A stretch of 64,000 nucleotides of DNA from IMG/VR virus record IMGVR_UViG_3300004463_000226, positions 1-64,000 of that record. One strand, 5' to 3'. Below the pieces are notes generated by a model that did no database searches, was not told the DNA's origin, and worked only from the letters and a program-made list of their open reading frames with translations. Below are positions 1-63,073 of the stretch, one piece after another; the first letter of the stretch is position 1, and every line of letters starts with the position of its first letter. The position numbers and the translations under genes were made by a program.

Positions 1-3000
1 AGATGCTAACAGTAAATTACCTGCGTCTATTACAGGAAATGCTGACGGTAATGCTGCTACCGCAACTAAATTATTGAATACCAGAACTTTTACTCTAACA
101 GGAGATGTTACAGGAAGCTTCACATTTGATGGTAGTGGTAATGTATCTTTTGCCACTACATATAAGGATTCTGGTGTAACAGCAGGTACTTATACGAAAG
201 TAACTGTAGATGCTAAAGGTACAGTTACTTCTGCAACAACCTTATCTGCTTCAGATATTCCTAACTTAGATGCTTCTAAAATTACTACAGGTACTATCGC
301 AGATGCTTTAATTAGTGGAACCTACACTGGCGTAAGTCTTAAACTAGGTACAACCACTAGTGTATTCAGTACACCAAGCACAGGAACACAAAACTCATCT
401 GCAAGAACAGTTTCACATTTAGCTGAATATAGGAACAGTGGATCGTCAGCAACTGGGGCGATTGTGTTTATTGCTCCGACTGGTACTGATGTAATAATGC
501 ATCGTCTAGAAATAGAAGGTATGTTATATGCGGGAGGAGCAGGATTTAAGCTTACAATCCAAGGATATAAAAATGCAGGTGCCTGGTCAAACACTAGTAA
601 GATATCTTCGGGTATCTCGAATATTCAAGTACGGTTCGGTGTTACTCCAGATGGAAAGAACTGTATTATACTGGGCGATGTTACCAGTACATGGAGTTAT
701 CCACATATATCCATAGTAAAAGCTATGTTCAGTCATAGTAACGCAACTGATGCTTACTGTGTTGGGTGGACAACTGCATTAGCAACTGATTTGAGCACAT
801 ATACGGCGGTAACTTCAGCTGTAGGTGAATCTACAAGTACTACAGTGGCAACAGCAGCAACCAAATTATCAACTGCTAGAACTGTTACTTTAACAGGAGC
901 TGTTACAGGTAACTTTAGTTTTGATGGTAATGGTGATGTATCTTTTGCTACTGCATATAAAGATTCAGGTGTAACAGCTGGAACATATCGTTCAGTTACA
1001 GTGGATGCTAAAGGTATGGTGACAGCAGGAACTAATCCAACTACATTAGCTGGATATGGTATCACAGATTCTATAACGAGATACACAACTAACGTTCAAG
1101 GACAAACATGGTCCAGAATACTTCAGTTGTCAGGTACTAGTACTTTAGGACATTCTTTTATTTTAAATCTTTCAGCTACTCGTGGAAGTGTTGTATATAA
1201 TGCAACATTTATGATTACAACATCTCATTATCGAACAGCTACCATTGTTCAAATAGGAAGCACGTCATATGCTACTAGCTTCAGTATTCGTGGTATAGTT
1301 AATGATTATGGTGATGGGTATATTGAGATATTGGACTCTTCTGCTGGTATATCGAATACATCTCAACAATCATTCTTTGTAACTGTTAGTAAAATAAGAG
1401 ATACAACTATAACACCTATTGCAACATTTACTGATGGAACTACTCTTCCTGCGAACCATGTTTCATCTAGTCAAATTACAACAGTTCCAGGGAGTTACAT
1501 CGTTGCTGACTTATCAGGTAATGCTGCTACAGCAACTAAATTAGCAACTGCTAGATCAATCACTCTCACAGGTGCAGTAACTGGATCAGTATCTTTTGAT
1601 GGTAGTGGTAACGTATCAATCACTACTGATTATAAAGATTCTGGTGTAACCGCTGGAACATATCGATCAGTTACTGTAGATGCTAAAGGTAATATTACTG
1701 CGGGTTCGAACCCAACGACATTATCAGGGTACGGTATAACAGATGCTGTTAATTCTTCTGAAGTTGTCACAACAGCTACGGCTAACAAATTGCTTAAGTT
1801 GGATTCCAATAGTAAATTACCTGCATCTATTACAGGAGATGCTGCTTCAGTTGGTGGTAATACAGTAAACGATGCATCGACAGGATCTACAATATTATGG
1901 ACATCTAATAAAATAAACACCGAATTACAGAAAGTTGTTCAAACAATTTCAGCAACACTACCAGCAACTTCTGGGTGGTATAGAATTGCACAATCCGCAG
2001 TGGGTATTGCTCGTAACAGTGCTAGATTTGAATTGGACTGGGCTGTAAGTGGACAACATGGTCAAGCAATCTTCAATGCTTCTATTATGTATTCACAGGG
2101 TGTTGAATTAAACCAGACATTATTCTCTACATTTGGTACATCGATAACAAGAGCACGTATTGTATATCATACAACATACACTGGAAACTATGCTTATCTA
2201 GAGGTATATAACTCGGCTGCTGTTGCATTAGTTGTTAATGTTCAAATGATGAGTACATTAGGATGGTCATTAGTCAACCCTAGTACAGTAGGATCTGTCC
2301 CAACAGGATATACTTCAAAAGAATTAATTTTCAACAAGGGTGTATCCACTACAGGACAGTTTAAATCGAATGTGGCGACAGGTACTGCGCCCTTTATTGT
2401 AGACTCTACTACAACAGTAGCTAACTTAAGTGCTGATTTACTTGATGGTCTGGATTCATTAGCATTCATTAAGGCTGATGGAACTGTAACTATGACAGGT
2501 GCCCACACTATCAATATTGCATCAAATCCTACAATAGGAGGAGATACCTTTGATAATGGGTGGCTTAAAGTAGGAACTTCTACTAATGGTATAACATTTG
2601 ATACAAATGAAATATATCAAACTGGTGCAGATTTAATCATTGGAACATTTGCAAGTGCTCCTGTTAACTATGGTAATATTATTTTTAGACCTCGTGCTGT
2701 TACTGCATTGACACTTGCTGATGATGGTCAAGCTACGTTTGCCAATAATGTATCATTAAGTAATAAACAATTATCAGGTGTAACAAATTTAAATGGTCAA
2801 TTTGGTACTATTGCTAGATCTATTGATGAGTGGTTGCGTTTCAATGATGACGGATCTCACACTAATGGGGTATATTTCGGTTCTAGTATTGTTAGAACAG
2901 ATGGTACTCTACAAGTAGGTAGCTCAGGTACAACAATGCAGGTAAACTCCACTACATTCACATATACTGGCGGATCGGCTGCGTTTAAGAAGTCAACTAA

Positions 3001-6000
3001 TGCCGTAACCGCTTTTCAGGTACAGAACTCATCAGGTGTAGGAGTATTTAATGTAGATACTACAAATACTAGGGTAGGTATTAACAATAACTCACCTAGT
3101 TATACTCTTGAAGTTGGTGGTATAATAGGTAACGATAACTATGTCATCTCTTATGTTGATGCTGCAAGTGGACATAACTTCTTAGGTTATCAATATGCAA
3201 CGAAGACAGCTATTACTCATTATAATTATTATGCAGGCACTCAACGGAATAATAAAACGTCTGATTCTATACGTTTAGATATGGCTAACATTACCGTTGA
3301 TAAGGTATATTATTACAATGGATCTACGTATACAGACGTTACAGTCAATGCTAAGACAGCCTTTGCGTCCACAGCATTTACAATGCTTGCTGCAACAACA
3401 AACTATCTATATTTCGGTGACGATTCTGCCACATTCAATGAATTATATGTTGATATTTCAACGGCAGGTGTCGGTGTAACATTAGCAGCTGAGTATTGGA
3501 ACGGAACAGCTTGGACTGCATTGACTATTACAGATGGAACTACTAATCTTAGTGTCGATGGTTGGATTTCTTGGTCTACTCCTGCTGGATGGACTAAAAA
3601 TGCTGTTTCTGATGCAACTACTAGATACTATATTCGATTAAAGACCACGACTACACCTTCAACCGTGCCTGTTGCTAACTATGCCAATATATCCCTATTT
3701 ACAGGAGATTTCTTAAACGCTAGGCATAATGGATCAATAATGGCACGTATAACAAATGTGGGTGATTTTGTAGGTAGGGTTTATACTTCAACAGTGGCTA
3801 CAGGAACAGCACCATTAACAGTTTCATCAACAACAGTAGTTACAAACTTAAATGCTGATAAACTTGATGGATATGATGCAACAGCTTTCGCTCAATTGTC
3901 GGGCGCTGCATTTACTGGTGGAGTATCTATGCCAAGCTCATCGAAGATTATAGGTGCTGGTACAGGATCTACTAACACAGCATGGTTAGGATTTTATGAA
4001 AGTAATGGAACGACCCGATTAGGTTGGGTTGGTGATGGATCAACAGGTAATGCTACAATGTCTCTAGCGTCTGATACTGGAGCTGTTGATTTAGTACCAG
4101 CAAGTGGATTTGATGCTACAGTAAACGGAAGTAAAATATGGACTGCGGCTAATGATGGAGCAGGAAGTACAATGGATGCTGATACTGTTGATGGTTACGA
4201 TACTAGTACTACAGCGGTAGCAAGTAAAATTCCAGTATATAATGCATCTGCACAATTAGTGGGTAGTATTACTGGTAATGCAGCAACGGCAACTAAATGG
4301 GCAACTTCTAGAACTGTTACATTAACTGGAGATGTTACAGGTAGTTTCTCTATTGATGGGTCAGGTAACGTATCATTTGCTACTACGTATAAAAACTCTG
4401 GTGTTACCGCTGGAACGTATACGAAAGTAACTGTCGACACTAAAGGTAATATTACTAGTGGAACTAGTTTAACAGCTACTGATATCACTACAGCATTAGG
4501 TTATACACCTTTAGATGATTCTGGCGATACAATGACAGGACAATTGTCTATCAACCGTACAGGTGGACAGATGATAAATCTTAAACAAAGTGATTATGCT
4601 TCTGGTCCATATAACTATATCGGTTTTGCTGATGATACTGGGTTATGGAAAGCATATGTTGGATATAACGCCGATAAAGATGGTAAATTTACAATTAATA
4701 ATAGCCTCGGAGATATAGTTTTTGCTTCTACTGGAGGATCTGTTCTTGTAAAACGACAAGCACTAAAAGTTACTAATGCTAGTGATGCATCTGTACTAAG
4801 TGTAGACGTTGTTAATAACAGAATTGGTATTAATATGGATGCACCAGCTTATGGATTTGATATGCGTGGCGGAACTATAAACAGTGATGGTCCTCATAGA
4901 TCATATATGACTACGACTTCAGATCATAACCTTATAGGTTTTAACTATGTACCAAGAACCACAATAACAGACTATAATTTGACTTTAGCGTCTCGTCAAA
5001 ATATTAAAACAAGTGCTGCTATAAATATGGATATGGCTAACCTAACTTGTGATAAAATATGGAGATATAGTGGAACTTATGAGGATGTAACAACATCAAT
5101 GAGATCATACGAATCTTCTATACTTGAGATATTTACAGCAACTTCGCATTATATGTATTTTGGGGATGCTGCTAAATTCTCAGAACTATATGTAGAAGTA
5201 TCTTATCCAGGTATGGGTGTGACATTGGTTGCTGAATACTGGAACGGTAGTGCATGGACATCTTTATCAATCACAGATGGAAGCACTAACATTACAGCTA
5301 GTGGATGGATTTCTTGGACCTCCCCTGCAAACTGGGCTATGAATGCTGTATCAGATGGTGTAAGCCGATATTATGTTCGTTTAAGATCAACGACAACACC
5401 ATCAACACCGCCAGATGTAACAACATTTAATATATCAGCATTTACTGGTAAATTTATTGCAATGGCAAACGGTAACTCTAGCCAAGCATATATTAACTAT
5501 GACGGCATGATATATGGAACATACTTCCGTTCAGATCCTAGTAGAAACTGGACAAGTAGCATGCGATATGGATTCGATTTGAATAACTCTGATATGATCG
5601 GCATTAACGCTTTATTCTTCAATGATGAATCTGCTGGAGATAGTGAAGCTATTCAGTTCCCTCATACAGGTATGTCAGGAAGCACTTCTGTATCTGACTA
5701 CGATAGTATCCGTGCATTAGATGGGAAATTCCTATTTAATAGTCAGGAAGTTGACTACATTGTAAGTAGTGGATCGAACGCCAATGGTTACTATATTAAG
5801 TATAATAGTGGTTTAATGATTTGCTGGGCTGATTTAAGTGTGGTTGCCAATACGTTAACATGGTCCAATTCAGCTATTGCTGGTGGAACTTATTATTATT
5901 GGGGATCTACATGGACATTCCCTGCAACATTTATAACAAGTAAGCACATTAGTGTACAAGCTTCTGGAGATTGTCCTATTAATGGTGTTGAGAGTCATCG

Positions 6001-6118
6001 AGCATATAATCCAACAGCTACTTCATGTAGCGTTGAACATGGTATATTATCAGCTTCTACTCCTTCAACAACAGGGACTCTCAGAAAGCAATACTTTGCT
6101 GTAGGATATTGGAAATAA
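1..6118 (+). CDS. Long tail fibre / receptor-binding protein, 5'-truncated by the window
   Basis: Frame is open from base 2 (DANSKLPASITGNADGNAATATKLL...), so 74 is not the true start. Thr/Gly/Ser-rich, with fibre repeats (GNAATATKL, SGVTAGTY.KVTVDAKG, PTTLAGYGITD, NADKLDG) and a typical fibre C-terminus (NGYYIKYNSGLMICW...WTFPATF...YFAVGYWK). Confidence 0.9.
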   Translation, partial: DANSKLPASITGNADGNAATATKLLNTRTFTLTGDVTGSFTFDGSGNVSFATTYKDSGVTAGTYTKVTVDAKGTVTSATTLSASDIPNLDASKITTGTIADALISGTYTGVSLKLGTTTSVFSTPSTGTQNSSARTVSHLAEYRNSGSSATGAIVFIAPTGTDVIMHRLEIEGMLYAGGAGFKLTIQGYKNAGAWSNTSKISSGISNIQVRFGVTPDGKNCIILGDVTSTWSYPHISIVKAMFSHSNATDAYCVGWTTALATDLSTYTAVTSAVGESTSTTVATAATKLSTARTVTLTGAVTGNFSFDGNGDVSFATAYKDSGVTAGTYRSVTVDAKGMVTAGTNPTTLAGYGITDSITRYTTNVQGQTWSRILQLSGTSTLGHSFILNLSATRGSVVYNATFMITTSHYRTATIVQIGSTSYATSFSIRGIVNDYGDGYIEILDSSAGISNTSQQSFFVTVSKIRDTTITPIATFTDGTTLPANHVSSSQITTVPGSYIVADLSGNAATATKLATARSITLTGAVTGSVSFDGSGNVSITTDYKDSGVTAGTYRSVTVDAKGNITAGSNPTTLSGYGITDAVNSSEVVTTATANKLLKLDSNSKLPASITGDAASVGGNTVNDASTGSTILWTSNKINTELQKVVQTISATLPATSGWYRIAQSAVGIARNSARFELDWAVSGQHGQAIFNASIMYSQGVELNQTLFSTFGTSITRARIVYHTTYTGNYAYLEVYNSAAVALVVNVQMMSTLGWSLVNPSTVGSVPTGYTSKELIFNKGVSTTGQFKSNVATGTAPFIVDSTTTVANLSADLLDGLDSLAFIKADGTVTMTGAHTINIASNPTIGGDTFDNGWLKVGTSTNGITFDTNEIYQTGADLIIGTFASAPVNYGNIIFRPRAVTALTLADDGQATFANNVSLSNKQLSGVTNLNGQFGTIARSIDEWLRFNDDGSHTNGVYFGSSIVRTDGTLQVGSSGTTMQVNSTTFTYTGGSAAFKKSTNAVTAFQVQNSSGVGVFNVDTTNTRVGINNNSPSYTLEVGGIIGNDNYVISYVDAASGHNFLGYQYATKTAITHYNYYAGTQRNNKTSDSIRLDMANITVDKVYYYNGSTYTDVTVNAKTAFASTAFTMLAATTNYLYFGDDSATFNELYVDISTAGVGVTLAAEYWNGTAWTALTITDGTTNLSVDGWISWSTPAGWTKNAVSDATTRYYIRLKTTTTPSTVPVANYANISLFTGDFLNARHNGSIMARITNVGDFVGRVYTSTVATGTAPLTVSSTTVVTNLNADKLDGYDATAFAQLSGAAFTGGVSMPSSSKIIGAGTGSTNTAWLGFYESNGTTRLGWVGDGSTGNATMSLASDTGAVDLVPASGFDATVNGSKIWTAANDGAGSTMDADTVDGYDTSTTAVASKIPVYNASAQLVGSITGNAATATKWATSRTVTLTGDVTGSFSIDGSGNVSFATTYKNSGVTAGTYTKVTVDTKGNITSGTSLTATDITTALGYTPLDDSGDTMTGQLSINRTGGQMINLKQSDYASGPYNYIGFADDTGLWKAYVGYNADKDGKFTINNSLGDIVFASTGGSVLVKRQALKVTNASDASVLSVDVVNNRIGINMDAPAYGFDMRGGTINSDGPHRSYMTTTSDHNLIGFNYVPRTTITDYNLTLASRQNIKTSAAINMDMANLTCDKIWRYSGTYEDVTTSMRSYESSILEIFTATSHYMYFGDAAKFSELYVEVSYPGMGVTLVAEYWNGSAWTSLSITDGSTNITASGWISWTSPANWAMNAVSDGVSRYYVRLRSTTTPSTPPDVTTFNISAFTGKFIAMANGNSSQAYINYDGMIYGTYFRSDPSRNWTSSMRYGFDLNNSDMIGINALFFNDESAGDSEAIQFPHTGMSGSTSVSDYDSIRALDGKFLFNSQEVDYIVSSGSNANGYYIKYNSGLMICWADLSVVANTLTWSNSAIAGGTYYYWGSTWTFPATFITSKHISVQASGDCPINGVESHRAYNPTATSCSVEHGILSASTPSTTGTLRKQYFAVGYWK

Positions 6119-13373: not shown

Positions 13374-13868
13374 ATGTTGCCGCTAATGCAAGTTACGTCA
13401 GAAATGACCTTGAGTTTATTAATTTATCTTACTATAGGCACCCTACCGTTAACCTACTCAGCATTGTCAGATATGGCGATAACTTTCTTATTCTATTTCA
13501 TTATCGGTTCTTTTGGAGCATTCTTAAAGGACTTATATGAAACTATGACTAAGAAGAATGAAAGGATACGGTTGGGTGAAGTAATAATCGGTGGAGCATG
13601 TTCAACGTTTATTTGTTATGGTCTTCAAGACACATGGTTAGAGGGGTTGAGTATTAACCTCATTGTCCTCATTACGTTCATTTGCGGTATTTTAGGTTTT
13701 GAGCTTTTCGGCAACTTGACTACCATGACTAGACTTAAGCGAACCATAAATGCTGCTATCGAACTTAAAAAAATGCATGTAACATACAATGACCCAAATA
13801 GAGTAGCAAATGATGATGAACAAAAAAAGCCAGCAAGGCGTACAAGAAAAAAAACAGAAGAAGAATGA
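13374..13868 (+). CDS. Multi-TM holin-like membrane protein
   Basis: Three to four TM segments and a basic/charged C-terminal tail, at the end of the late module. Confidence 0.5.
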   Translation: MLPLMQVTSEMTLSLLIYLTIGTLPLTYSALSDMAITFLFYFIIGSFGAFLKDLYETMTKKNERIRLGEVIIGGACSTFICYGLQDTWLEGLSINLIVLITFICGILGFELFGNLTTMTRLKRTINAAIELKKMHVTYNDPNRVANDDEQKKPARRTRKKTEEE

Positions 13869-13887
13869 GTATGGTTTCCATACTCAT
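13865..13887. terminator. Bidirectional terminator between convergent genes
   Basis: ATGAGTATGG-TTT-CCATACTCAT flanked by A-rich and T-rich runs. Confidence 0.7.
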
Positions 13888-16028
13888 CCTTTTTTGCTTC
13901 GTAAACTTATCTTTGGTATACCTCTAAATTTATAGTTTCTTATAGCTTCATTCATGAAATGCTCATGTACATTGAAGTCGTTTCTTTTCTGTAGTATCTC
14001 ATAGTTACCTTTCAAATTCATCACATATGTATTTACTGAATCATTGAAATAGTTCTTTAAGATATCGAAAAGTTTATTAACAACTTCACTATCTGCAACA
14101 GGAACCATAATCTCAACCCGTCTATCTAAGTTTCTAGTCAGTAAGTCTGCACTAGAAATATAAATATTCGGATCTCCATTATTGTAGAAATAATATATCC
14201 TACTATGCTCTAAATATCTACCTATTATACTTCTTATTCTTATATTTTTATTAATAGGTTTCATAGAGCAAATTCCTCTGACAATAATATTAATCTGAAC
14301 ACCTCTTTCAGATGCTATATATAACTTCCGTATAATTCCCATATCTGATAAGGAATTGAGCTTTAATGTAATTGCTCCTTTCTTTCCTTTCTCAACATTA
14401 TTAATCTCTCGATCAATTAAATCATACAGTTTAGTACGAATGTTATAAGGAGAATAACAAACCTTAGATATTTCATCTCTAGGATCAGAGTAACCTGATA
14501 AGATATTAAAGATTGTAATAATATCTTCTCCAATTTTATTATTGGATGTAAAGAATGATAAGTCTGTATAAATACGTGCAGTCTTATCATTGTAGTTACC
14601 TGTTCCTACATGACAATATATTTTGAGTCCTGATTTCTTCTTAGATCTTCGTACAACAGCAATGAATTTACAGTGGGTTTTTAGCTCCTCTAATCCATAA
14701 ATTATTTTACATCCTGCTAGACGAAGTTTCTCAACTAGAGATATATTTCTATCTTCATCGAATCTAGCTTTAATCTCTAATAGAACATTTACCTGTTTTC
14801 CTTTTCTTGCTGCATTACATAAAGCCTCAACAATTGGAGAATCAGATGATGATACACGATATAGTGTCTGCTTGATAGCTAATACATCTTTATCTTGTGC
14901 AGCATGTTCTAGAAACTTTACTACAGGTTCAAATGATTCATATGGATGATGTAACAGAATATCGTTGTTATCAATAGCTGTAAACATATCATGCTCACCC
15001 ATAAGTTCTTCTGGATACTGTGGTTCAAATGATTCATATTCATATAAACCACTACGAATTGGCATACCTGATAAGAAAGATAAATCGACAATTGTACTTA
15101 CCTTATAAACATTTTTCTTATTCATGTCAAACATCTTTACTAACAACTTCAATAGTTGCTTTGGAATATCTGCACTAATATCCATGAAGATAGGATTACT
15201 ATTTTCACGTCGTTTTAAAGTCTGTCTCATACGGTCAATGATATATACATCCTTATTTGGATCTAATTCTATATCAGCTTCACGTACGATTCTCATACAA
15301 CCTCGATATATTATTTCTTTATTAATAAACACTCTATGGAGATTATTGAATATTATCTCCTCCAACAGAATATACTTTCTCTCCTCACTATCTTCTGATT
15401 CAATCTCATAAATTCTGTCTATACCTATATCTATAGGTATAATAGACACAACATTGTGATTTGGATTTCTCTTATCTTCTATACCAGCAATTATACTTAA
15501 CTGCTTAGAATGAATTAAGGGAAAATCCTTTGTAGTATCAAAAGTGATTGGAGTTATTAATGGATAAATTTGTCTAGTGAATAGCTTATCAACCTGAGAT
15601 TGTTCCTTCACTGTTAAGTCATGATACTTACATATAGAGATATTATTTTTCTCTAGTTTCTTTCGTATCTTGACATAACATTCTTCTTGGAGATATTTGA
15701 ATTTAACTATCTCCTTGAATAGTGCAGTATACTCATCCTCAGGTGTTAGACCAGAAATATCCATTACATAGCTTTCGTCGTATAACTTCTTTAACACAGA
15801 TGCAAATCGAACCATAATGAATTCATCAAGATTTGAGGCTGTAATTCCTAAGAATTTTAAACGCTCAAGTAACGGAACTTCATCTCTTATTGCTTGATGA
15901 AGAACACGTTTGTTGAATTCCATCCAACTCAATTCCCTATTGATATAGAAGTCTGGGTTGTTATAAATCGAGTTAAGCTCGTTTCGTTCTAAGTTGTATA
16001 TGTCTGCGATGTTCAATGTAGTATTCAT
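13884..16028 (-). CDS. ppk1: Polyphosphate kinase 1
   Basis: NRELSWMEFNKRVL, SNLDEF, HHPYESF, IKQTLYR, EIKARFDE, KTHCK (phospho-His), HVGTGNYN, GRYLEHSRIY and SADLLTRNLDRRVE are all present. Likely start 16028. Confidence 0.96.
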   Translation of the reverse strand: MNTTLNIADIYNLERNELNSIYNNPDFYINRELSWMEFNKRVLHQAIRDEVPLLERLKFLGITASNLDEFIMVRFASVLKKLYDESYVMDISGLTPEDEYTALFKEIVKFKYLQEECYVKIRKKLEKNNISICKYHDLTVKEQSQVDKLFTRQIYPLITPITFDTTKDFPLIHSKQLSIIAGIEDKRNPNHNVVSIIPIDIGIDRIYEIESEDSEERKYILLEEIIFNNLHRVFINKEIIYRGCMRIVREADIELDPNKDVYIIDRMRQTLKRRENSNPIFMDISADIPKQLLKLLVKMFDMNKKNVYKVSTIVDLSFLSGMPIRSGLYEYESFEPQYPEELMGEHDMFTAIDNNDILLHHPYESFEPVVKFLEHAAQDKDVLAIKQTLYRVSSSDSPIVEALCNAARKGKQVNVLLEIKARFDEDRNISLVEKLRLAGCKIIYGLEELKTHCKFIAVVRRSKKKSGLKIYCHVGTGNYNDKTARIYTDLSFFTSNNKIGEDIITIFNILSGYSDPRDEISKVCYSPYNIRTKLYDLIDREINNVEKGKKGAITLKLNSLSDMGIIRKLYIASERGVQINIIVRGICSMKPINKNIRIRSIIGRYLEHSRIYYFYNNGDPNIYISSADLLTRNLDRRVEIMVPVADSEVVNKLFDILKNYFNDSVNTYVMNLKGNYEILQKRNDFNVHEHFMNEAIRNYKFRGIPKISLRSKKG

Positions 16029-16163
16029 CTTGAACCCCCATATGAATTTATTCACTGTTATAATATATAAATAAAAAGGTCATTCCTATGTTGAATACCC
16101 CTTCTAACTAAATGTTATATGATGAATAAAAAGACATGTAATGGGAGTTGCCCATTACATGCA

Positions 16164-17456
16164 TTATTTTTCTTCTTCAAAATCCAACAAGTCTGATACC
16201 AATGTATTGATATACAGCATATTGACATAAATAACCATACGATATGTGGATGTGGTATTAATTACTTTTGTTGTCAATATAAAATTCTCATAATCTACAG
16301 AATACTGATCTAATTGCTCAGATAACTGCTCATTATCTTTATATACGAAAACACGAACAGCCATATCATATGGTAATCCTTTTTCTTTCTGATACGCAAG
16401 AGTTTTCTGTAGAGATTTATTTAACAACGGAGTAAAATCCAATTCATCAGGACCGTTGAATGTTTCAACCTTATAAAAAGGAGATGAATACATAACCCAT
16501 CCAGGAGGAGTTTCTTGAGTAAATAAATCTACAAGTGTATATGTGGGCTTTACTGTACTAGCATCTTCATATGTTAGATTAACATCTGTCTCAAAAGATA
16601 CCTTTTCAAAAACTGAAGGTTCTGACGCAAATAAGAAGTATAACCCTGCTGTAGTAAACTCAGTTTCAATTGTAAAACTAATTGAATATACATCATCAAC
16701 AAAACCCTTCTTAGAACCATCATCTATAGATAGATTAGTAACAACAGCATCTATCTGTGTTGGATAGTATCTAAAGAATTCATCTGTACCTGATGAGTTT
16801 CTTAGTTTATACGTTATTGGATAAATTGATACTCCGTTTAGATAATCAATAAAATCTTTAGTATTATTGATATCTATCTCTGCTACCTTGGCTACAAGAT
16901 CCATTATTGTCTTAGGAACATTACTCTCTAGTGCTGTATTTATGAAGAAAGGTACATCCTGACGAAGCATATTTTTGAAATACAGTGCTCTATTGAATTG
17001 CTCCATTTGGGACTCTACGATAATAGTTACATCAAAATTCATCTTTATCCTGTTCATTAGGTAATCCATATGAATACCTTTAACAGGATCTTTTATGAAT
17101 GGTTGTAAGTTACCTGCGTCCCTAGTGTGAAAATTATCTGACATATGAGTTGTCAGATATGTCTTGCTCAAAAATGTATCGTCATTATTAAGATCTAATC
17201 TCGGACGCACAATCAACATAGGTTTATTCTTTTTGATAAACTCTTTATTAGTATTATCAAAAATATTAAAGTGACGATATGCTATTGTCGATGCAATATT
17301 GACAGTCTTAAAGTAATTAGAAGGAAATAGCCTCTTTAAATACTCTGTGATAAAAGCTGTCACATTACCATACGTATGTGCTTGTGATGATGGCATCGAG
17401 ATATAGTCATAATCAGGAATACTATTCTCTAAATCAAACATTATATACACCTCCAC
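16164..17456 (-). CDS. Conserved jumbo-phage structural protein (putative)
   Basis: 430 aa; late-type promoter at about 17468 and GGAGG RBS; probable start 17441. Confidence 0.5.
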   Translation of the reverse strand: MEVYIMFDLENSIPDYDYISMPSSQAHTYGNVTAFITEYLKRLFPSNYFKTVNIASTIAYRHFNIFDNTNKEFIKKNKPMLIVRPRLDLNNDDTFLSKTYLTTHMSDNFHTRDAGNLQPFIKDPVKGIHMDYLMNRIKMNFDVTIIVESQMEQFNRALYFKNMLRQDVPFFINTALESNVPKTIMDLVAKVAEIDINNTKDFIDYLNGVSIYPITYKLRNSSGTDEFFRYYPTQIDAVVTNLSIDDGSKKGFVDDVYSISFTIETEFTTAGLYFLFASEPSVFEKVSFETDVNLTYEDASTVKPTYTLVDLFTQETPPGWVMYSSPFYKVETFNGPDELDFTPLLNKSLQKTLAYQKEKGLPYDMAVRVFVYKDNEQLSEQLDQYSVDYENFILTTKVINTTSTYRMVIYVNMLYINTLVSDLLDFEEEK

Positions 17457-19111: not shown

Positions 19112-20527
19112 TTAGATGTTGTTAAACTCATATAATCCAATCATCTGGTCTTTCAATAAGTTGAAGTCATCATTGAACAAACCATCATTACGTGATACAT
19201 ACATATTCTTTCTTGGATTATATGTCTTATCATATGCTTTGGCTTGCTTCTTAGTCTTCAACGAGATGATATTAAGGATATCGCCGTCAAAGTCAGCATT
19301 CAATACTCGCAAGATTTGAATAGGTAATGACATCGTATAGTTGTCATCATATTCTCTTGGAATATCTACAATCTTCATTAGCAACATTGAACCATAGTTG
19401 ATGGTAGGATTTCGGTTAATCATTATCTTTGGTTTACGTTTCTTAACCAGATAAGCCATGATTTCATATATCTTAGCATCAAACTTGATTGTTGCTTTGT
19501 ACCAATCTTCATGAGCATTATTATGAGTAGTATTATTCATCTTAGCTAGATGAGCAATAATCTCATACTTATACAATTCCAGAAATGCCAGATATCCTAA
19601 GCGTACTTCATCTGCTCTTAGATACGGATCTGGAATTATTACGTTACGTGCTGAGAAGTTTATTCGACCACCTAGGATTTGGTCTTTAATATGACCATCC
19701 TTTTGGTTTATTTGTGAGAATATCAATTGCCATAAATCATTGACATTCTTCTGAATAGCTGACAAGATTGTTGGTTCATCCATTCTAGCACGTTTACTTC
19801 TAGGTCTGGCTTCAATCCTATTCTTTGTATTCAGTAACTGACTATCAGAGAAGATAACATTATACTTTCTATCAATGTTATTGAAGAAGAATGTTTCTCC
19901 TCTGAATGATACTGGACGAAGAACTGATGAGTATACAGGTATACAAGATGCGAATACTTTATCGCGATCTTTTCGTACATCTGTAATCAACTCATGCTTA
20001 TTCTTTTTCTTCTGCCAATAGTAATCAAGGATTTCATCGAATCGTTCCTTAAACTCAATCAAACCTATACCACGGAATGGATTTGATTTACTGGACTTAT
20101 CTTTGATATGCCCATCACGAGTCATTTCTTTCTCGATTTCGATGATTTCAATAAATTGCTTATCGCCAATGATCGACTTAAGCATTCTGTAAAACTGAGG
20201 CTGGATAATGAAGTGGTTATGTAACCTGATCCAGCCAAATATTCTCAAGTCAACATCACGGAACTTTACTTCAGTGTTACATACGGAACACACTTCTCCT
20301 TCATAAACACGACCTTTGAGTTCTTTACATTTACAAGCATATCTCTCAGCAAATGCATCTTCATCTTCCCAGTCAGTAGCAAATAAAGGAGAATGTATAC
20401 CATACATGGCTTTTTCTTCCTTAGCTTTAAAAGCTTTTTCTTTTACTTCAAAGCCTCTCCCTGTAATAATATCTTTCCTATATTCCTCATCCCAGTTAAG
20501 TTTCTCTAAATATACTTCTCTCCCCAA
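19112..20527 (-). CDS. Phage multisubunit RNA polymerase beta' N-terminal part (catalytic), probably non-virion RNAP
   Basis: Zn-binding CKC...CSVC, FGWIRL, GGRINFSARNVI.PDP, INRNPT and NADFDGD catalytic motif; lies downstream of an early-type motif at 20977. Confidence 0.93.
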   Translation of the reverse strand: MGREVYLEKLNWDEEYRKDIITGRGFEVKEKAFKAKEEKAMYGIHSPLFATDWEDEDAFAERYACKCKELKGRVYEGEVCSVCNTEVKFRDVDLRIFGWIRLHNHFIIQPQFYRMLKSIIGDKQFIEIIEIEKEMTRDGHIKDKSSKSNPFRGIGLIEFKERFDEILDYYWQKKKNKHELITDVRKDRDKVFASCIPVYSSVLRPVSFRGETFFFNNIDRKYNVIFSDSQLLNTKNRIEARPRSKRARMDEPTILSAIQKNVNDLWQLIFSQINQKDGHIKDQILGGRINFSARNVIIPDPYLRADEVRLGYLAFLELYKYEIIAHLAKMNNTTHNNAHEDWYKATIKFDAKIYEIMAYLVKKRKPKIMINRNPTINYGSMLLMKIVDIPREYDDNYTMSLPIQILRVLNADFDGDILNIISLKTKKQAKAYDKTYNPRKNMYVSRNDGLFNDDFNLLKDQMIGLYEFNNI

Positions 20528-21043: not shown

Positions 21044-22291
21044 TTATTGTAACTTGTTAAGATTTCCGTTACGATCCATTCTGAACTTAAGATTTCTAAT
21101 GTCGTTTGCTATCTCAACAGATGCAGATTGTTCATTCATCATTTCTTGAACTTTATTCATGATCTGCATAACTTCACTATAACGTTTTTCTAATGCTTCA
21201 TAATCTTCCTCTAAATCTCTAAGACGAGTATTCAAACGTTTGTTTTGACCTCTAAGAGACTCATTCTCTTTACGAAGATCAGTACGCTCTGAAATCATGT
21301 TAGAGATATTATCAAGGAAGTTATTTAAGTTATCAGTTTCCTGAGCCTCAATAGATTTCTTAGGAACATCTTCCATTGAATCTAATGAGTTGCCGACAAC
21401 TACTTCAACCTTAGGTAGTTTATCTCCGTCAGTATCAACACCAATTTTCTCTAATGCCGTTTTACGTCCATTATCTTTTACAAGATTTAAGAAAGGATCT
21501 TCATTATCATCTATTTTAGGAATTGGAGAAGGTCTTTCAAAGATTTTAGGCATTTCATCTCCTTTATAATTAGGTTTCACTTCAGGTCTCATTAAATCTA
21601 ACAAGCTTTCAGCAGGTTCAAATGGTATAGATGACTTAATAATATATCTTTTATCATCAGAAACATCTTCACCAAAATCTGAAACTTCTTCTGCTGCAAT
21701 TACTGATAATTCTGTTACAGGTGTTTCTTCAGTCACAGTTTTATTCTTAATACCAAATACCTTTTCAACATCAACAGGAATACCTTCGTTCTCAACTTCT
21801 TCAATAGCCTGTTGGATATGTTGTGGTTTAATAATCGCTGCTTTATCCTCAACTTTAACTACATTATCTTTGTTGAAAGAAGCACGGATCGCACGAACTT
21901 GTTCATACTCTTCGGTGTATCTTTCTTTTACAGCAGAAGTCCAACGAGCACCAATAGCTCCGATAGATCTATTAGGAAATAACTGACTCATTAAGATATA
22001 GGCATCAGTAAGATTTTGTCCCTTGGATAAAGAGTCTTTAACACATTCCCATAACATTTCATCCTCTTCATTCGTCCAACCTAAACGCTTAGGTTCACGA
22101 ATTTCAGGATGGTTAGGTTTAATAACATTTGTCCAACGATAAGCAATTGCTCCTTCGGTTCTTCCTGCCATAGTCTTAGCAAGTTCACGGTAGCAATCTG
22201 AGAAAGGTTTATCTGCTTTTGCATAAAGCTCAATTGCATCCAAAATCATTTTGTCCTCTTTAGGTGTCCAACTCTTGCCATGTTTACTCAT
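21044..22291 (-). CDS. RsfA/YlbO-family (Myb/SANT-like) transcription regulator with a duplicated DNA-binding domain
   Basis: Two WT..ED...R(T/S).GAI..RW repeats, a C-terminal coiled coil, and the RsfA-family terminal motif FRMDRNGNL. Confidence 0.8.
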   Translation of the reverse strand: MSKHGKSWTPKEDKMILDAIELYAKADKPFSDCYRELAKTMAGRTEGAIAYRWTNVIKPNHPEIREPKRLGWTNEEDEMLWECVKDSLSKGQNLTDAYILMSQLFPNRSIGAIGARWTSAVKERYTEEYEQVRAIRASFNKDNVVKVEDKAAIIKPQHIQQAIEEVENEGIPVDVEKVFGIKNKTVTEETPVTELSVIAAEEVSDFGEDVSDDKRYIIKSSIPFEPAESLLDLMRPEVKPNYKGDEMPKIFERPSPIPKIDDNEDPFLNLVKDNGRKTALEKIGVDTDGDKLPKVEVVVGNSLDSMEDVPKKSIEAQETDNLNNFLDNISNMISERTDLRKENESLRGQNKRLNTRLRDLEEDYEALEKRYSEVMQIMNKVQEMMNEQSASVEIANDIRNLKFRMDRNGNLNKLQ

Positions 22292-22353: not shown

Positions 22354-22869
22354 TTATATAATATATAACTCTTCTTTGTGAAATTGCGATTTTCTCTTAT
22401 ATTCACAAAAGTAGTATACTATACCAACTTTCTTACATTCCTTACCTTTTTGTCTAGATTGCAATTCCCACTCATCCCACTTGATATCAGGGAAGAATGT
22501 ATCACCTATAAATGATTCATATATCTTTGTGATATACATCTTCTCGACATATGGTAAGAATAGTTTATATATTTCTTCTCCTCCAAAGATATATACTCTT
22601 TCATCTTTAGTAGCTTCAAGTACTTCTTCAACAGAATGAAATATTTCACAATTTTTAGCGGTATAATCTATGTTCCGAGTAAGAATAATATTACGTCTAT
22701 TGGGAAGTGCTTTCCCAATAGACTCAAAGTTTCTTCTACCCATAACAATAGTACCACCGCTTGTTGTAACCTTCACATGTTGCAGATCTTCTGGAAGATC
22801 CCACGGAAGATTATTTTTATAACCAATTACTTGATTATGATCAAATGCAACAATTAGTGATAATGGCAT
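22354..22869 (-). CDS. dfrA: Dihydrofolate reductase
   Basis: LIVA...IG..N.LPW.LPEDL, MGRRNFESIGKALPNRRNIILT, IFGG..IY, GDTFFP. Confidence 0.97.
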   Translation of the reverse strand: MPLSLIVAFDHNQVIGYKNNLPWDLPEDLQHVKVTTSGGTIVMGRRNFESIGKALPNRRNIILTRNIDYTAKNCEIFHSVEEVLEATKDERVYIFGGEEIYKLFLPYVEKMYITKIYESFIGDTFFPDIKWDEWELQSRQKGKECKKVGIVYYFCEYKRKSQFHKEELYII

Positions 22870-22870
22870 T

Positions 22871-23887
22871 TTAATTCTCCTTTAATACTTCTAGTTGCTC
22901 ACCCACAGACTTCTTCCAGTCAATTCGTAGATTATCCTCATAAAAGTGGTGTGTTATTAGTGTAGGGAATTCACTTCCTGAGGCAGACCGATGTCCGCCG
23001 CCACCAAATAAACGTTTAGAAATTTCACCTACATGTATATGGTCTTTTACTGTACGATATGAAACCTTACCAGCGCCCATGTTTACAATAACAACAAAAT
23101 CAATATCAGGATTATTTTTACACAGGGTGTTACCTAGAATTGAATGATGCTGTTCAGCATATACTACCCCAACATTATATACTGTAGCACCATCGTTTAC
23201 GATAGTTTTGAACATCTGTTTTTCCTTGTGCTCAATAAAACGCTGCTCACGCTTAGCTTCAGTATCGACTAAATATCTTTCATTTGTTGATAATACTGGA
23301 TCAAGGTCATTAGTGAATCTTTCAATAAAATCATCATGTCCAATAATCCACATTAGATCACTTAACATTTTAGGATGCTGTATACCTAGCTTATTCCAGT
23401 CCCATGTATCATACAGACGAACCACCTCAGCAAATTTACCAAGATCTCCTTTTTCAGATGGTGTTAATACAGGATTTGGATTAACAAGTAAACGCATCAT
23501 TTCACTAGTGCCGCTTGTTTTAGTACCGAAGCAAGTAGAAAATACACTAGCCCATTCATACTCATTCAACCAAGATGCTGTTTCATGATGATCGATTAGA
23601 TTTAAAGTAACTCCTGTGCGGCTACAGAAATAATCTAGCATTTCAGCTGTATCAGGTTGAACTGAAATATCCGTAATAAGGATTCTTTCGAATGGAAAGA
23701 CTTCATCTGTTGGATTACCGTCTTCATCAACATACTTAGAAAGAAACTCTTTAATTTTGTTATCAATATTATCATATCCACAAATATGATGTAAAGTGAA
23801 CTGGAAAATGTTCTTTGCCATTGTAATACATCCAATACCATCTAAATCATTATGACTAAAATGTACAACTTCTTCTAAAACCTTCAT
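22871..23887 (-). CDS. DHH/DHHA1 phosphoesterase (nanoRNase NrnB-like)
   Basis: SHNDLDG, ITDIS, IDHH, YDTWDW, VSYR, GGGH..ASG. Confidence 0.9.
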   Translation of the reverse strand: MKVLEEVVHFSHNDLDGIGCITMAKNIFQFTLHHICGYDNIDNKIKEFLSKYVDEDGNPTDEVFPFERILITDISVQPDTAEMLDYFCSRTGVTLNLIDHHETASWLNEYEWASVFSTCFGTKTSGTSEMMRLLVNPNPVLTPSEKGDLGKFAEVVRLYDTWDWNKLGIQHPKMLSDLMWIIGHDDFIERFTNDLDPVLSTNERYLVDTEAKREQRFIEHKEKQMFKTIVNDGATVYNVGVVYAEQHHSILGNTLCKNNPDIDFVVIVNMGAGKVSYRTVKDHIHVGEISKRLFGGGGHRSASGSEFPTLITHHFYEDNLRIDWKKSVGEQLEVLKEN

Positions 23888-47315: not shown

Positions 47316-48041
47316 TTACGCAATGTTTTCAAAAGCTTTAAAGTTAGTCCGTAGAAAATCCACTATCGTTTCATGGATTGTATCTATAGGTAACATTTCA
47401 CCATTAGGTGTACATTCAATACGATGCCAGCCGCAGTACTTAATAACACGGTCTCTGACACCATATACATCTTTTAGATGGTCAATATTTTCATGAATAT
47501 CTTCCATCGGTTTACCTTCATATCGCTTCATAATATTAGATACAGATATTTCAGGTTTTACATCCAAGTAGAACACTGCATCTGGATGAGGTAATCCTAA
47601 GTCAATATACTCAAGTTCCTCAATCCATTGAATATAACCTTCAATGTTATTCTTGTTAGTGAGGTTACCTGCTTGGTGAAGAATATTTGAAGTAGTATAT
47701 CTGTCACAGATTACATGTGTTCCTTCTTTGAGATGTTCAATGAGGGATTTACCGCTATACACCTGCTCAATAAATGATGAAACACGGTCAACAGCATAAA
47801 ACGATGATATCTGTTTAATATATTGGATATTGTCTTCCTGATGATACATGTTCTTAAACTGTCCGTCCAAGTATTTCCTAACAAGAACTGAAGATTCATT
47901 AGCATAGTTAGGAAATGATACAATAATAACAGGGATATTAGAAGCCTCTAGTCTTCTATATAACTTTATCGCCTGTGTATTTTTACCACTACCATCTAGC
48001 CCTTCAATGCCAATAACTCTTCCTGAATATCCTAGTGTCAT
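47316..48041 (-). CDS. tmk: Thymidylate (dTMP) kinase
   Basis: IEGLDGSGK.TQ P-loop, FP.Y, YAVDR, CDRY..SN, P.PD.VFYLD. Confidence 0.92.
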   Translation of the reverse strand: MTLGYSGRVIGIEGLDGSGKNTQAIKLYRRLEASNIPVIIVSFPNYANESSVLVRKYLDGQFKNMYHQEDNIQYIKQISSFYAVDRVSSFIEQVYSGKSLIEHLKEGTHVICDRYTTSNILHQAGNLTNKNNIEGYIQWIEELEYIDLGLPHPDAVFYLDVKPEISVSNIMKRYEGKPMEDIHENIDHLKDVYGVRDRVIKYCGWHRIECTPNGEMLPIDTIHETIVDFLRTNFKAFENIA

Positions 48042-61968: not shown

Positions 61969-62125
61969 AATTAATTCCCCCTAGGTTTATTATTGATTTT
62001 GAATATATTATTTATATTCACTATTATAATATATAGGTGATATTGCCGACTTTACGAATTAACATTTATTACCAGTAAAACAGTTATGTAAGAAATACAT
62101 ATCAATGAGAGGGGAACATACTAAA

Positions 62126-63073
62126 ATGGGTCAATTTGATAAAGAATGGAATAGGGTATTAGAGAATATTATGTTAAATGGAGTATGGCAGAAAGAAGAA
62201 CATGTCCGTGCTAAATGGGACGATGGTACTCCAGCTCCAGCTAAATTTGTTACAGGAGAAAAGATGGTATTTGATAATAGTGAAGCTCTAGTCCCAACGA
62301 CTAAAGAAATTAAACGTAAGAGTCCATTACGTGAACTAAAATGGATCTGGTTCCTTAAATCAAACGTGGTTCAGAAACTTCGTGATTTGGGAAGTAGTAT
62401 TTGGGATAAATGGGAAATTAAAGAAGGTGAATGGACAGGTACAATTGGTCCAGCTTACGGACATCAATTAGGTAAACAATGTAGGAAATTTCCAGTAGAA
62501 AAACTTCGCTGGGAACATCTACATCCTGAGCATGCTGTTGAGTTAAGACAAATGATAGAGGATGCTTTAGCACAAGGTTTTATTATTAAATATGTAATGC
62601 TGGATCAGGTAGACTTCCTCATCCAAGGTCTTCTTACTAACCCTGGTTCTCGCCGATATATTCTATCACTATGGGGTATTGAAGATCTTGACTACATGGC
62701 ACTAGAACCATGTGTATGGAAGACAGGGTGGCAATATGTTGATGGTAAAATTGATTTAATAACTGGTGTACGTTCAAATGATATCTGTGTAGGAAATCCT
62801 TTTAATGTGTTTCAATATCAGGTGTTATGGAATCTTATCTGTCAGGTAACAGGTCACACACCAGGGAAGATTCAATTTGATCTCGATAATCCACATATTT
62901 ATGACAGACACATTCCTGAGGCTATGAAACAGTTAGTGTATCCTCAAAAAACAGCTCCAAAACTTTGGATTAATCCTGATATTAAAAACTTTTATGACTT
63001 TAATCCAGATACTGATGTTAAATTGATTGACTATGAACACGGTCCAGACCGTTACTATGAGGTGGCTGAATAA
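62126..63073 (+). CDS. thyA: Thymidylate synthase (B. subtilis ThyA / phi3T ThyP3 type)
   Basis: M.QFDK, R.KW.DGTPA, IWD.W, IG.AYG.Q, SRR, ALEPCV (catalytic Cys), RSND...GNPFNVFQY, HIYDRH. Confidence 0.96.
   Translation: MGQFDKEWNRVLENIMLNGVWQKEEHVRAKWDDGTPAPAKFVTGEKMVFDNSEALVPTTKEIKRKSPLRELKWIWFLKSNVVQKLRDLGSSIWDKWEIKEGEWTGTIGPAYGHQLGKQCRKFPVEKLRWEHLHPEHAVELRQMIEDALAQGFIIKYVMLDQVDFLIQGLLTNPGSRRYILSLWGIEDLDYMALEPCVWKTGWQYVDGKIDLITGVRSNDICVGNPFNVFQYQVLWNLICQVTGHTPGKIQFDLDNPHIYDRHIPEAMKQLVYPQKTAPKLWINPDIKNFYDFNPDTDVKLIDYEHGPDRYYEVAE

What the first reader, a model, noticed from the sequence alone, without database searches (positions are those of the whole stretch)
13884..16116. Full-length phage-encoded polyphosphate kinase 1 under both phage promoter classes
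Seen: all PPK1 catalytic motifs are intact, the base composition is phage-like, and both an early motif (16060) and a late motif (16105) lie upstream, so the gene is wired into phage transcription. To my knowledge PPK1 is an uncommon phage auxiliary gene. Inference: it mobilises host polyP for NTP supply, or makes polyP to alter stress, sporulation or Lon proteolysis. Two Nudix enzymes and a DHH phosphoesterase in the same window may form a broader phosphate/alarmone-manipulating set.
Basis: partly seen in the sequence, partly recalled or inferred. Interest (0 to 1): 0.6.

Follow-up and report, generated by a model that had tools for sequence, protein, structure and literature searches.

The report
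Jumbo-phage polyphosphate kinase, early gene
A 234-kb soil phage related to Bacillus phage AR9 carries an intact polyphosphate kinase 1 gene behind an early phage promoter, and the gene turns out to be an old, strongly conserved feature of a whole uncultured group of such giant phages rather than a one-off capture.

Summary
Window 13884-16028 (-) encodes a complete, orthodox PPK1 of 714 aa. It has all four Pfam domains, scores 735 bits against TIGR03705, and keeps the catalytic His.

The window is the start of a complete 234,335-bp IMG/VR jumbo phage from rhizosphere and soil metagenomes. The phage has AR9-type split RNA polymerase genes.

The early promoter is real. The site TTA-TATATTAT-N6-G (16070-16053) matches both the phage's own consensus and the published AR9 consensus, and it is conserved upstream of ppk1 in distant relatives.

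The "late" motif AACA-N6-TA (16116-16105) is real genome-wide. At ppk1, however, it cannot be told from chance: its distance is atypical, it is not enriched in early-promoter regions, and relatives lack it.

New result: ppk1 is a clade hallmark.
- 53 IMG/VR contigs carry it, and all 21 near-complete records also encode the phage RNAP.
- 11 of 11 near relatives found with the RNAP marker carry it.
- The position beside the AR9 g251 homologue is conserved.
- dN/dS is 0.01-0.17.
- The sequences form a virus-only branch that is at most 43% identical to any bacterium.

Cultured kin (AR9, PBS1, S6, phiR1-37) lack it. The direction of the reaction in vivo is unknown. The proposed Nudix/DHH "set" is not supported. 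Viral ppk1 is already listed in metagenome gene surveys.

The parts
13884..16028 (-). ppk1 coding sequence, 714 aa plus stop. ATG 16028 is the likely start; the upstream in-frame GTG at 16055 overlaps the predicted transcription start.
   Evidence: ORF; translation; four PPK1 Pfam domains; TIGR03705 735 bits; E. coli PPK 1XDO E=7.5e-102; homologues of 704-713 aa.
16035..16039 (-). Shine-Dalgarno-like GGGGG, 6 nt before ATG 16028
   Evidence: Sequence read. AGGAGG/GGAG-type words are the most enriched upstream words genome-wide.
16053..16070 (-). Early (virion-RNAP type) promoter TTA-TATATTAT-aacagt-G. The predicted transcription start is G 16053, giving a 25-nt leader.
   Evidence: TATATTAT is 7-fold enriched upstream of genes. 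Consensus of 37 sites: TA before the motif in 86-94%, G at +7 in 81%. It matches the AR9 consensus AAATATATATTAT-(6N)-G+1 (PMC5312081) and an annotated AR9 early promoter. It is conserved 30-68 nt upstream of ppk1 in relatives.
16105..16116 (-). Late-promoter-like word AACA-tttagt-TA. Its function at this site is doubtful.
   Evidence: The motif class is enriched 4.8-fold genome-wide. This copy is 76 nt from the ATG against a mode of 20-30 nt. PWM rank is 49 of 228. There is no excess over the antisense control in early-promoter regions. It is absent in relatives.
16134..16162 (-). Intrinsic terminator hairpin ending the upstream gene (AR9 g251 homologue). It insulates ppk1 from read-through.
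   Evidence: 12-bp stem, 5 GC pairs, T run
13861..13891 (.). Bidirectional terminator hairpin at the ppk1 stop, shared with the convergent + strand gene 13374-13868
   Evidence: 14-bp stem on the - strand, 10-bp stem on the + strand, T runs on both
16164..17456 (-). Conserved neighbour: homologue of AR9 g251 (phrog_21946, function unknown). It serves as the synteny anchor for ppk1.
   Evidence: It lies 1.2-3.8 kb upstream of ppk1 in more than 25 related loci.
19112..20527 (-). Jumbo-phage multisubunit RNA polymerase beta' fragment. It is used as the marker of the phage lineage.
   Evidence: phrog_2987; 31-34% identity to phiR1-37, BpSp, LPJP1, S6 and AR9/PBS1; homologue present in 21 of 21 near-complete PPK1-carrying IMG/VR records.

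Best explanation
Shown:
- The gene encodes an orthodox, catalytically complete PPK1.
- It belongs to a complete 234-kb jumbo phage of the AR9/PBS1/phiR1-37 group, which has two multisubunit phage RNA polymerases.
- It is a monocistronic unit bracketed by terminators.
- It is one member of a virus-only PPK1 branch that sits at a conserved genome position in this phage lineage and is under strong purifying selection.

Inferred:
- Transcription comes from an AR9-type early promoter read by the injected virion RNA polymerase. The enzyme would therefore appear in the first minutes of infection, independently of the host polymerase.
- The phage thereby takes control of the ATP-polyphosphate exchange in a (probably Bacillota) host.
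- I think net polyP synthesis early in infection is the most likely role. It would bank phosphoryl groups and phosphorus while ATP is plentiful.
- The same reversible enzyme could return them as ATP, GTP or dNTPs when replication and packaging of a 234-kb genome raise ADP and NDP levels.

Reasons for preferring synthesis:
- None of 31 related jumbo genomes carries PPK2, and none of 26 PPK1-carrying genomes carries PPX.
- PPK1 is absent from some Bacillota, such as B. subtilis. A host polyP store therefore cannot be taken for granted.
For: Identity and integrity. No residue is fixed differently between phage and bacterial PPK1s.

Phage context:
- Complete virus record.
- RNAP beta' fragment and g251 homologue shared with AR9, PBS1, S6, phiR1-37, BpSp and LPJP1.
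- The ppk1 junctions with its neighbours are present in contigs of separate runs.

Early promoter; PMC5312081. It is conserved upstream of ppk1 in L002, L003 and L005, and in about 24 of 51 IMG/VR loci, down to 34-36% PPK1 identity. No sigma-70-like site lies in the 135-nt upstream spacer, and terminators lie on both sides.

Lineage conservation:
- More than 100 protein clusters at 44-78% identity, many on 200-270 kb contigs.
- 53 IMG/VR loci.
- 21 of 21 near-complete records have the phage RNAP.
- 11 of 11 near relatives found by the RNAP marker alone are PPK1-positive.
- PPK1 identity tracks RNAP identity, r=0.94, n=35.
- Synteny with the g251 homologue.
- 30 viral sequences lie on one side of a branch with SH-aLRT 99. 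31 lie on one side in the best tree.
- The best bacterial identity is 42-43%.
- dN/dS is 0.014-0.17.

Direction:
- PPK1 prefers synthesis and PPK2 the reverse (PMC9520863 and PMC8776046 abstracts).
- No PPK2, no PPX and no NDK in these phages.
- PPK1 is absent from B. subtilis and L. lactis in the control genomes.
Against: - No expression data exist. No RNA run holds this sequence.
- The promoter assignment rests on motif statistics and on analogy to AR9.
- The host is unknown.
- The direction of the reaction in vivo cannot be inferred from sequence. PPK1 is reversible, and M. tuberculosis PPK1 makes all NTPs and dNTPs from polyP (PMC3215733).
- Early ATP consumption for polyP looks costly for a phage.
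- PPK1 is missing from some relatives at about 40% RNAP identity (G049 and G052) and from all cultured kin. It is therefore not essential to this type of phage.
Confidence: 0.5

Rival explanations
1. PolyP mobilisation. The early PPK1 runs mainly in reverse. It drains the host's polyP granules into ATP and GTP and, through its auxiliary NDP-kinase activity, into dNTPs. This would fuel transcription and replication in slow-growing, energy-poor soil cells.
For: - PPK1 is reversible, and M. tuberculosis PPK1 phosphorylates virtually all NDPs and dNDPs from polyP (PMC3215733).
- The phage has a dNMP-kinase-like gene (47316-48041) but no NDK.
- Early timing fits a start-up energy boost.
- The phage comes from rhizosphere and soil, where starved cells are expected (own knowledge).
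Against: - PPK2, not PPK1, is the family biased towards NTP formation (PMC9520863). No related phage carries PPK2.
- This role needs a host polyP store, and PPK1 is absent from some Bacillota.
- Nothing in the sequence separates phage from bacterial PPK1s.
Confidence: 0.3
2. Regulatory polyP. The phage makes polyP as a signal or effector rather than as a store. Examples are stimulating Lon-type proteolysis, condensing the host nucleoid, interfering with sporulation or stress programmes, or acting on the RNA degradosome.
For: - Early expression alongside host-takeover genes. In AR9 the equivalent locus holds small early genes of unknown function.
- From my own knowledge, not checked here except as noted: polyP is required for lytic growth of phages P1 and fd (Li, Rao and Kornberg 2007, cited in PMC2435150); polyP affects Lon, Hfq/nucleoid and B. 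cereus sporulation.
- NCBIfam names this subfamily 'RNA degradosome polyphosphate kinase'.
Against: - No phage-encoded partner was found (Lon, a polyP-binding CHAD protein, or similar). No such search was made beyond PPX, PPK2 and NDK.
- The known effects come mostly from Proteobacteria.
- This cannot be separated from the storage model by sequence.
Confidence: 0.15
3. Passenger or artefact. The gene is a recent host capture without selected function, or bacterial DNA mis-assembled or mis-binned into a viral contig.
For: Many 'phage' PPK1 hits in GenBank are short, unannotated metagenome fragments. One close homologue is filed under a bacterial MAG on a 3.6-kb contig (P0020).
Against: - Codon usage and GC are fully phage-like.
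- The gene has a phage early promoter and phage terminators.
- The junctions are present in separate runs.
- The same position is kept in dozens of 200-290 kb phage genomes.
- dN/dS is 0.014-0.17.
- No bacterium exceeds 43% identity.
Confidence: 0.02

Closest known systems
Bacterial polyphosphate kinase 1 (E. coli PPK, PDB 1XDO/1XDP; TIGR03705)
   Same: - Same four-domain architecture and the same length class.
- The phospho-histidine and the second PLD-like histidine are conserved, as are the residues I recall as ATP-binding.
   Different: - At most 42-43% identical to any bacterial sequence found. It belongs to a virus-only branch.
- It is driven by a phage RNA-polymerase promoter instead of a host sigma promoter.
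- There is no adjacent ppx, unlike the E. coli ppk-ppx operon (own knowledge for the operon; for the absence of ppx).
Virus-encoded ppk1/ppk2 reported as auxiliary metabolic genes in metagenome surveys (reservoir sediments PMC13188868; cold seeps PMC12106651; activated sludge, Li et al. 2025 Water Res, cited in PMC13188868 and not readable here)
   Same: A PPK gene on viral contigs, interpreted as viral influence on polyP and phosphorus cycling.
   Different: - In what I could read, those reports are gene lists across mixed viral contigs.
- Here the gene is tied to one phage lineage (AR9-type jumbo phages). It has a defined early promoter, a conserved locus, co-divergence with the phage RNAP and measured purifying selection.
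- No paper in the searchable library combines 'polyphosphate kinase' with 'jumbo phage' or 'huge phages'.
Vibrio phages vB_VcorM_GR7B and GR11A (cultured, about 200 kb, annotated polyphosphate kinase)
   Same: Cultured jumbo phages with a full-length PPK1 (32-33% identity), embedded among small hypothetical genes.
   Different: - No multisubunit phage RNAP was detected in GR7B, so it is a different phage lineage.
- The host is proteobacterial.
- This is probably an independent acquisition.
Bacillus phage AR9/PBS1 (Takahashivirus) and kin (S6, phiR1-37, BpSp, LPJP1)
   Same: - Split RNAP genes and the g251 homologue are shared.
- The early consensus TATATATTAT-N6-G and the late consensus AACA-N6-TA are nearly identical.
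- The locus layout is the same: g251, early promoter, early cassette, convergent virion genes.
   Different: - None of these cultured phages has PPK1. In AR9 the cassette holds small hypothetical genes.
- This phage also has ThyA, DHFR and a Tmk-like gene. Its DNA may therefore not be the dU-DNA of AR9 and PBS1.

Membership tests
Polyphosphate kinase 1 (PPK1) | Four-domain architecture: N-terminal, middle (head), C1 and C2 PLD-like domains | tested here: met
   PF13089 (37-141), PF02503 (151-329), PF17941 (356-524) and PF13090 (535-692), all far above the gathering scores.
Polyphosphate kinase 1 (PPK1) | Full-length match to the equivalog model TIGR03705 above its curated cut-off | tested here: met
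   735 bits against a cut-off of 465.85, covering profile positions 2-672 of 673.
Polyphosphate kinase 1 (PPK1) | Autophosphorylated catalytic histidine (E. coli His435) and companion histidines (His454, His592) | tested here: met
   His452, His473 and His608 align with them in the 1XDO alignment. H452 and H608 are conserved in at least 61 of 62 sequences. All three are invariant in the 39-sequence alignment. The E. coli residue numbers come from my own knowledge.
Polyphosphate kinase 1 (PPK1) | ATP/phosphate-binding residues of the tunnel (E. coli N45, R375, S380, R405, Y468, F488, P507, R564, R621) | tested here: met
   The corresponding N66, R391, S397, R422, Y487, F507, P527, R584 and R637 are invariant or nearly so. 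The list of E. coli residues is recalled, not checked in a paper.
Polyphosphate kinase 1 (PPK1) | Catalyses ATP + polyP(n) <-> ADP + polyP(n+1) | not testable with these tools
   Needs an enzyme assay.
AR9/phiKZ-type jumbo phages with multisubunit RNA polymerases | Split beta/beta' RNAP genes | tested here: met
   Window 19112-20527 matches phrog_2987. It is 31-34% identical to the beta' fragments of phiR1-37, BpSp, LPJP1, S6 and AR9/PBS1. Only this one fragment was examined.
AR9/phiKZ-type jumbo phages with multisubunit RNA polymerases | AT-rich early promoter consensus with a start 6 nt downstream, and the AR9 late consensus AACA-N6-TA/G | tested here: met
   Both are enriched in sense orientation upstream of genes. 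The consensus comes from PMC5312081.
AR9/phiKZ-type jumbo phages with multisubunit RNA polymerases | Deoxyuridine-containing DNA (AR9, PBS1, S6, phiR1-37) | not testable with these tools
   Base modification is invisible in the sequence. The presence of ThyA, DHFR and a Tmk-like gene argues against a simple dU genome.
Continuously expressed AR9-type gene (tandem early + late promoters) | A functional late promoter in addition to the early one | tested here: inconclusive
   The word is present at 16116-16105. However, its distance is atypical, there is no enrichment over antisense in early-promoter regions (7 against 5), and it is not conserved in relatives.

The most novel reading that the evidence does not exclude
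PPK1 was acquired once by the ancestor of a large, still uncultured, family-level group of AR9-related jumbo phages of soil and other habitats. It has been kept ever since as an early gene at a fixed locus. On this reading, phage-directed polyphosphate metabolism is an integral step of their infection programme: a viral phosphagen/phosphorus bank, or a polyP-based host take-over. It would not be an occasional accessory metabolic gene.
Probability: 0.35. Interest if true: 0.65.

Novelty: new member of a known kind. Interest (0 to 1): 0.5.

Why it matters
Polyphosphate is a central energy, phosphorus and stress polymer in bacteria. No phage has been shown experimentally to make or use it with its own enzyme.

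This locus offers a concrete test case:
- an intact PPK1;
- a predictable early transcript;
- more than 100 natural sequence variants;
- PPK1-less cultured relatives (AR9, PBS1) into which the gene could be placed for comparison.

It also shows that viral ppk1 hits in metagenome surveys are concentrated in one jumbo-phage lineage. That changes how such hits should be read in phosphorus-cycling studies.

Tried and rejected
- Single-protein scans of IMG/VR with PPK1 and with the RNAP fragment found nothing or only 2 loci. Alignments were needed.
- The 19-row RNAP alignment was too diverse to scan with.
It therefore gives a biased sample of distant phages. It was used only to show that some RNAP-bearing phages lack PPK1.
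- PHROGs has no family for this protein.
- A Nudix-box regular expression over all ORFs found nothing. The Pfam NUDIX model hits only at 112.5 kb.
- No RNA-seq run holds the sequence, so expression and the transcription start could not be checked. Laying contigs only confirmed that the region is contiguous.
- The Water Research 2025 paper on viral PPKs is not held.
- A search for residues fixed differently in phage and bacterial PPK1s found none, so there is no sequence clue to a functional shift.
- PPK2, PPX and NDK were sought in the phage and its relatives, and all were absent.
- An AU test for a single viral clade was not needed, because the best tree already has it, though with weak support for the 31st row.
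- One bacterial row (L101) was mis-extracted and gave a very long branch in the first tree. It was left out of the second tree.
- Structure prediction, complex prediction and the large representative-protein search were not used, because the family assignment was not in doubt.
Full report
**What is there**

The only long ORF in the region runs 13884-16055 on the minus strand. Its product has the four PPK1 domains in order. It scores 735 bits against the PPK1 equivalog TIGR03705, whose cut-off is 466. It aligns end to end with E. coli PPK (1XDO, E=7.5e-102).

His452, His473 and His608 align with E. coli His435 (the phosphorylated histidine), His454 and His592. The residues I recall as lining the ATP site are invariant in a 39-sequence alignment. 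They are also among 50 columns conserved in at least 61 of 62 phage and bacterial sequences.

The first in-frame start, GTG 16055, overlaps the predicted transcription start. ATG 16028 is preceded by GGGGG at a 6-nt spacing. It gives 714 aa, in line with homologues of 704-713 aa.

**Whose gene it is**

The window is the first 64 kb of a 234,335-bp IMG/VR virus record rated 100% complete. The record has 33.7% GC and about 277 ORFs.

The phage carries a fragment of a multisubunit RNA polymerase beta' subunit. This fragment is 31-34% identical to those of phiR1-37, Bacillus phages BpSp and AR9/PBS1, Listeria phage LPJP1 and Staphylococcus phage S6 and its kin. It also carries a homologue of AR9 g251 directly upstream of ppk1.

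ppk1 has 31.0% GC and a codon usage that correlates 0.91 with the rest of the genome. Contigs from separate rhizosphere runs, and a 95-99% variant from a 2024 soil run, span both ends of the gene. It is therefore not an assembly artefact.

The host is unknown. Three things point to Bacillota:
- strong AGGAGG-type ribosome-binding sites;
- the hosts of its cultured kin;
- the hosts of phages that share its NrnB-like gene.

**Promoters**

TATATTAT occurs 38 times in sense orientation within 100 nt upstream of genes, against 5.3 expected. Aligning 37 such sites gives TTA-TATATTAT-N6-G, with G at +7 in 81% of them. This is essentially the AR9 early consensus AAATATATATTAT-(6N)-G+1, where G is the start and the promoter is read by the injected virion polymerase (PMC5312081). 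An annotated AR9 early promoter has the same form.

The ppk1 site (16070-16053) fits every informative position. The same motif lies 30-68 nt upstream of ppk1 in the metagenomic relatives L002, L003 and L005. It is also there in about 24 of 51 IMG/VR loci, including lineages with only 34-36% PPK1 identity.

No sigma-70-like site lies in the upstream spacer. Terminator hairpins bracket the gene. ppk1 is thus a monocistronic early unit.

The AR9 late word AACA-N6-TA is also genuinely enriched in this genome: 65 sense copies against 13.5 expected and 16 antisense. It usually lies 20-30 nt before the ATG. The copy before ppk1 (16116-16105) is weaker evidence for four reasons:
- It is 76 nt away, where the observed counts are low (3 sites in the 70-79 nt bin against 25 in the 20-29 nt bin).
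- Its flanks carry little information (rank 49 of 228).
- In the 35 early-promoter regions the sense word is no commoner than the antisense control (7 against 5).
- Relatives lack it, with the exception of L018/L019.

I therefore accept the early promoter and leave the late one open.

**How widespread it is**

Among 50,697 GenBank phage records only 17 match PPK1, all below 41% identity. Apart from the Vibrio jumbo phages GR7B and GR11A, they are fragments or doubtful records. GR7B lacks the phage RNAP.

The large protein collection gives a different picture. It holds more than 100 clusters at 44-78% identity before the first named bacterium (Lacrimispora, 43%), and many of them lie on 200-270 kb contigs. 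Three such contigs show the same neighbourhood as the window.

A profile-guided scan of IMG/VR found 53 loci, mostly on 180-290 kb contigs. All 21 records that are at least 90% complete also encode the RNAP fragment. PPK1 identity tracks RNAP identity (r=0.94, n=35; the rows are related, so this is descriptive).

A scan with the RNAP marker alone, which is blind to ppk1, found 11 near relatives (57-69% RNAP identity). All 11 are PPK1-positive. At about 40% RNAP identity and beyond, the gene is patchy. Two near-complete genomes lack it, and so do the phiKZ-like records.

ppk1 lies 1.2-3.8 kb downstream of the g251 homologue in more than 25 loci, down to 35% PPK1 identity.

Across 185,579 species genomes the best bacterial match is 42% (Clostridium magnum, Lachnospiraceae). 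In a maximum-likelihood tree, 30 viral sequences sit on one side of a branch (SH-aLRT 99), opposite 29 bacteria from about ten phyla. Adding the 31st RNAP-phage sequence keeps one clade in the best tree, with weak support. A FastTree of 147 rows agrees.

Unsaturated pairs give dN/dS of 0.014-0.17.

Together these results indicate one old acquisition, vertical descent with some losses and one relocation, and continuing selection.

**What it does**

Sequence cannot give the direction of a reversible enzyme. I favour net synthesis early in infection, with later return of the phosphoryl groups, for these reasons:
- PPK1 is the synthesis-biased family and PPK2 the NTP-forming one (PMC9520863 and PMC8776046).
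- No related phage has PPK2, PPX or NDK.
- PPK1 is missing from Bacillota such as B. subtilis (control genomes), so a host store is not guaranteed.

The main rival is mobilisation of host polyP into ATP, GTP and dNTPs. It is biochemically sound (PMC3215733). A regulatory role for polyP is a third option.

I put about 0.5, 0.3 and 0.15 on these three. I put about 0.9 on the narrower statement that this is an active, selected, early-expressed phage PPK1.

**Side claims**

- The DHH-like gene (22871-23887; weak DHH and DHHA1 hits) is an NrnB-type nanoRNase. It is shared with AR9 and other PPK1-less Bacillota phages.
- No Nudix gene was detected in the window.
- There is therefore no evidence for a coordinated phosphate/alarmone module.

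**Novelty**

Viral ppk1 and ppk2 are already listed in metagenome surveys (PMC13188868 and PMC12106651). A cultured Vibrio jumbo phage is annotated with the gene.

What I did not find described is the lineage-wide, early-promoter-linked, syntenic and purifying-selected PPK1 of AR9-related jumbo phages. I rate it a new member of a known kind, of moderate interest.

Noticed in passing
Relatives G005, G007, G008, G017, G031, G035 and G040 (homologues of window 19112-20527): In several related phages the RNAP beta' fragment gene is split into 2-5 separate pieces with intervening DNA. A GIY-YIG gene lies nearby in L003 and L004. This suggests introns, inteins or homing elements in the polymerase genes.
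   Followed up: no
window 62105-63073 (+), 22354-22869 (-), 47316-48041 (-): The phage encodes a ThyA-family enzyme, DHFR and a thymidylate-kinase-like protein. Its cultured kin (AR9, PBS1, S6, phiR1-37) have dU-DNA. Even so, it keeps the AR9 late promoter word, which AR9 reads through template-strand uracils. The DNA may contain T or a modified pyrimidine.
   Followed up: partly
genome-wide; for example window 34926, 48500, 49470 and 63333, downstream of early promoters: Many early promoters are followed 8-25 nt downstream by a shared box resembling GTAATCAATAATAATT. This would be a conserved 5' leader element of early transcripts. The ppk1 leader has only a partial match.
   Followed up: no
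window 22871-23887 (-): A DHH/DHHA1-like protein is an NrnB-type oligoribonuclease homologue. It is 37-39% identical to genes of Lysinibacillus and Bacillus phages and is also present in AR9. All phage hits with a named host infect Bacillota, which hints at the host phylum.
   Followed up: yes
G000 112547-112741 (+), outside the window: This is the only Pfam NUDIX match in the whole phage genome.
   Followed up: partly
window 16164-17456 (-): A 430-aa protein of unknown function (phrog_21946) is a core gene of the AR9, PBS1, S6, phiR1-37, BpSp and LPJP1 group (AR9 g251, annotated 'putative membrane protein'). It stays next to ppk1 across deep divergence.
   Followed up: partly
window 21044-22291 (-): A 415-aa protein has an N-terminal Myb-like DNA-binding domain and a long coiled coil. 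This is unusual for a phage. A TATATTAT motif lies 66 nt upstream.
   Followed up: no
window 2-6118 (+): An ORF of more than 2000 aa runs off the window start. It has repeated matches to tail-fibre and head-decoration (Ig-like) PHROGs.
   Followed up: no
window 18058/18069, 62004/62033; G000 106490/106519, 117972/117975, 188739/188771: Pairs of TATATTAT motifs face each other on opposite strands within about 10-30 nt. They are either divergent early promoters or palindromic promoter-proximal elements.
   Followed up: no
P0020: A PPK1 that is 65% identical to the phage protein is deposited as 'Brevinematia bacterium' MAG on a 3.6-kb contig. This is probably a jumbo-phage fragment binned into a bacterial MAG.
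   Followed up: no
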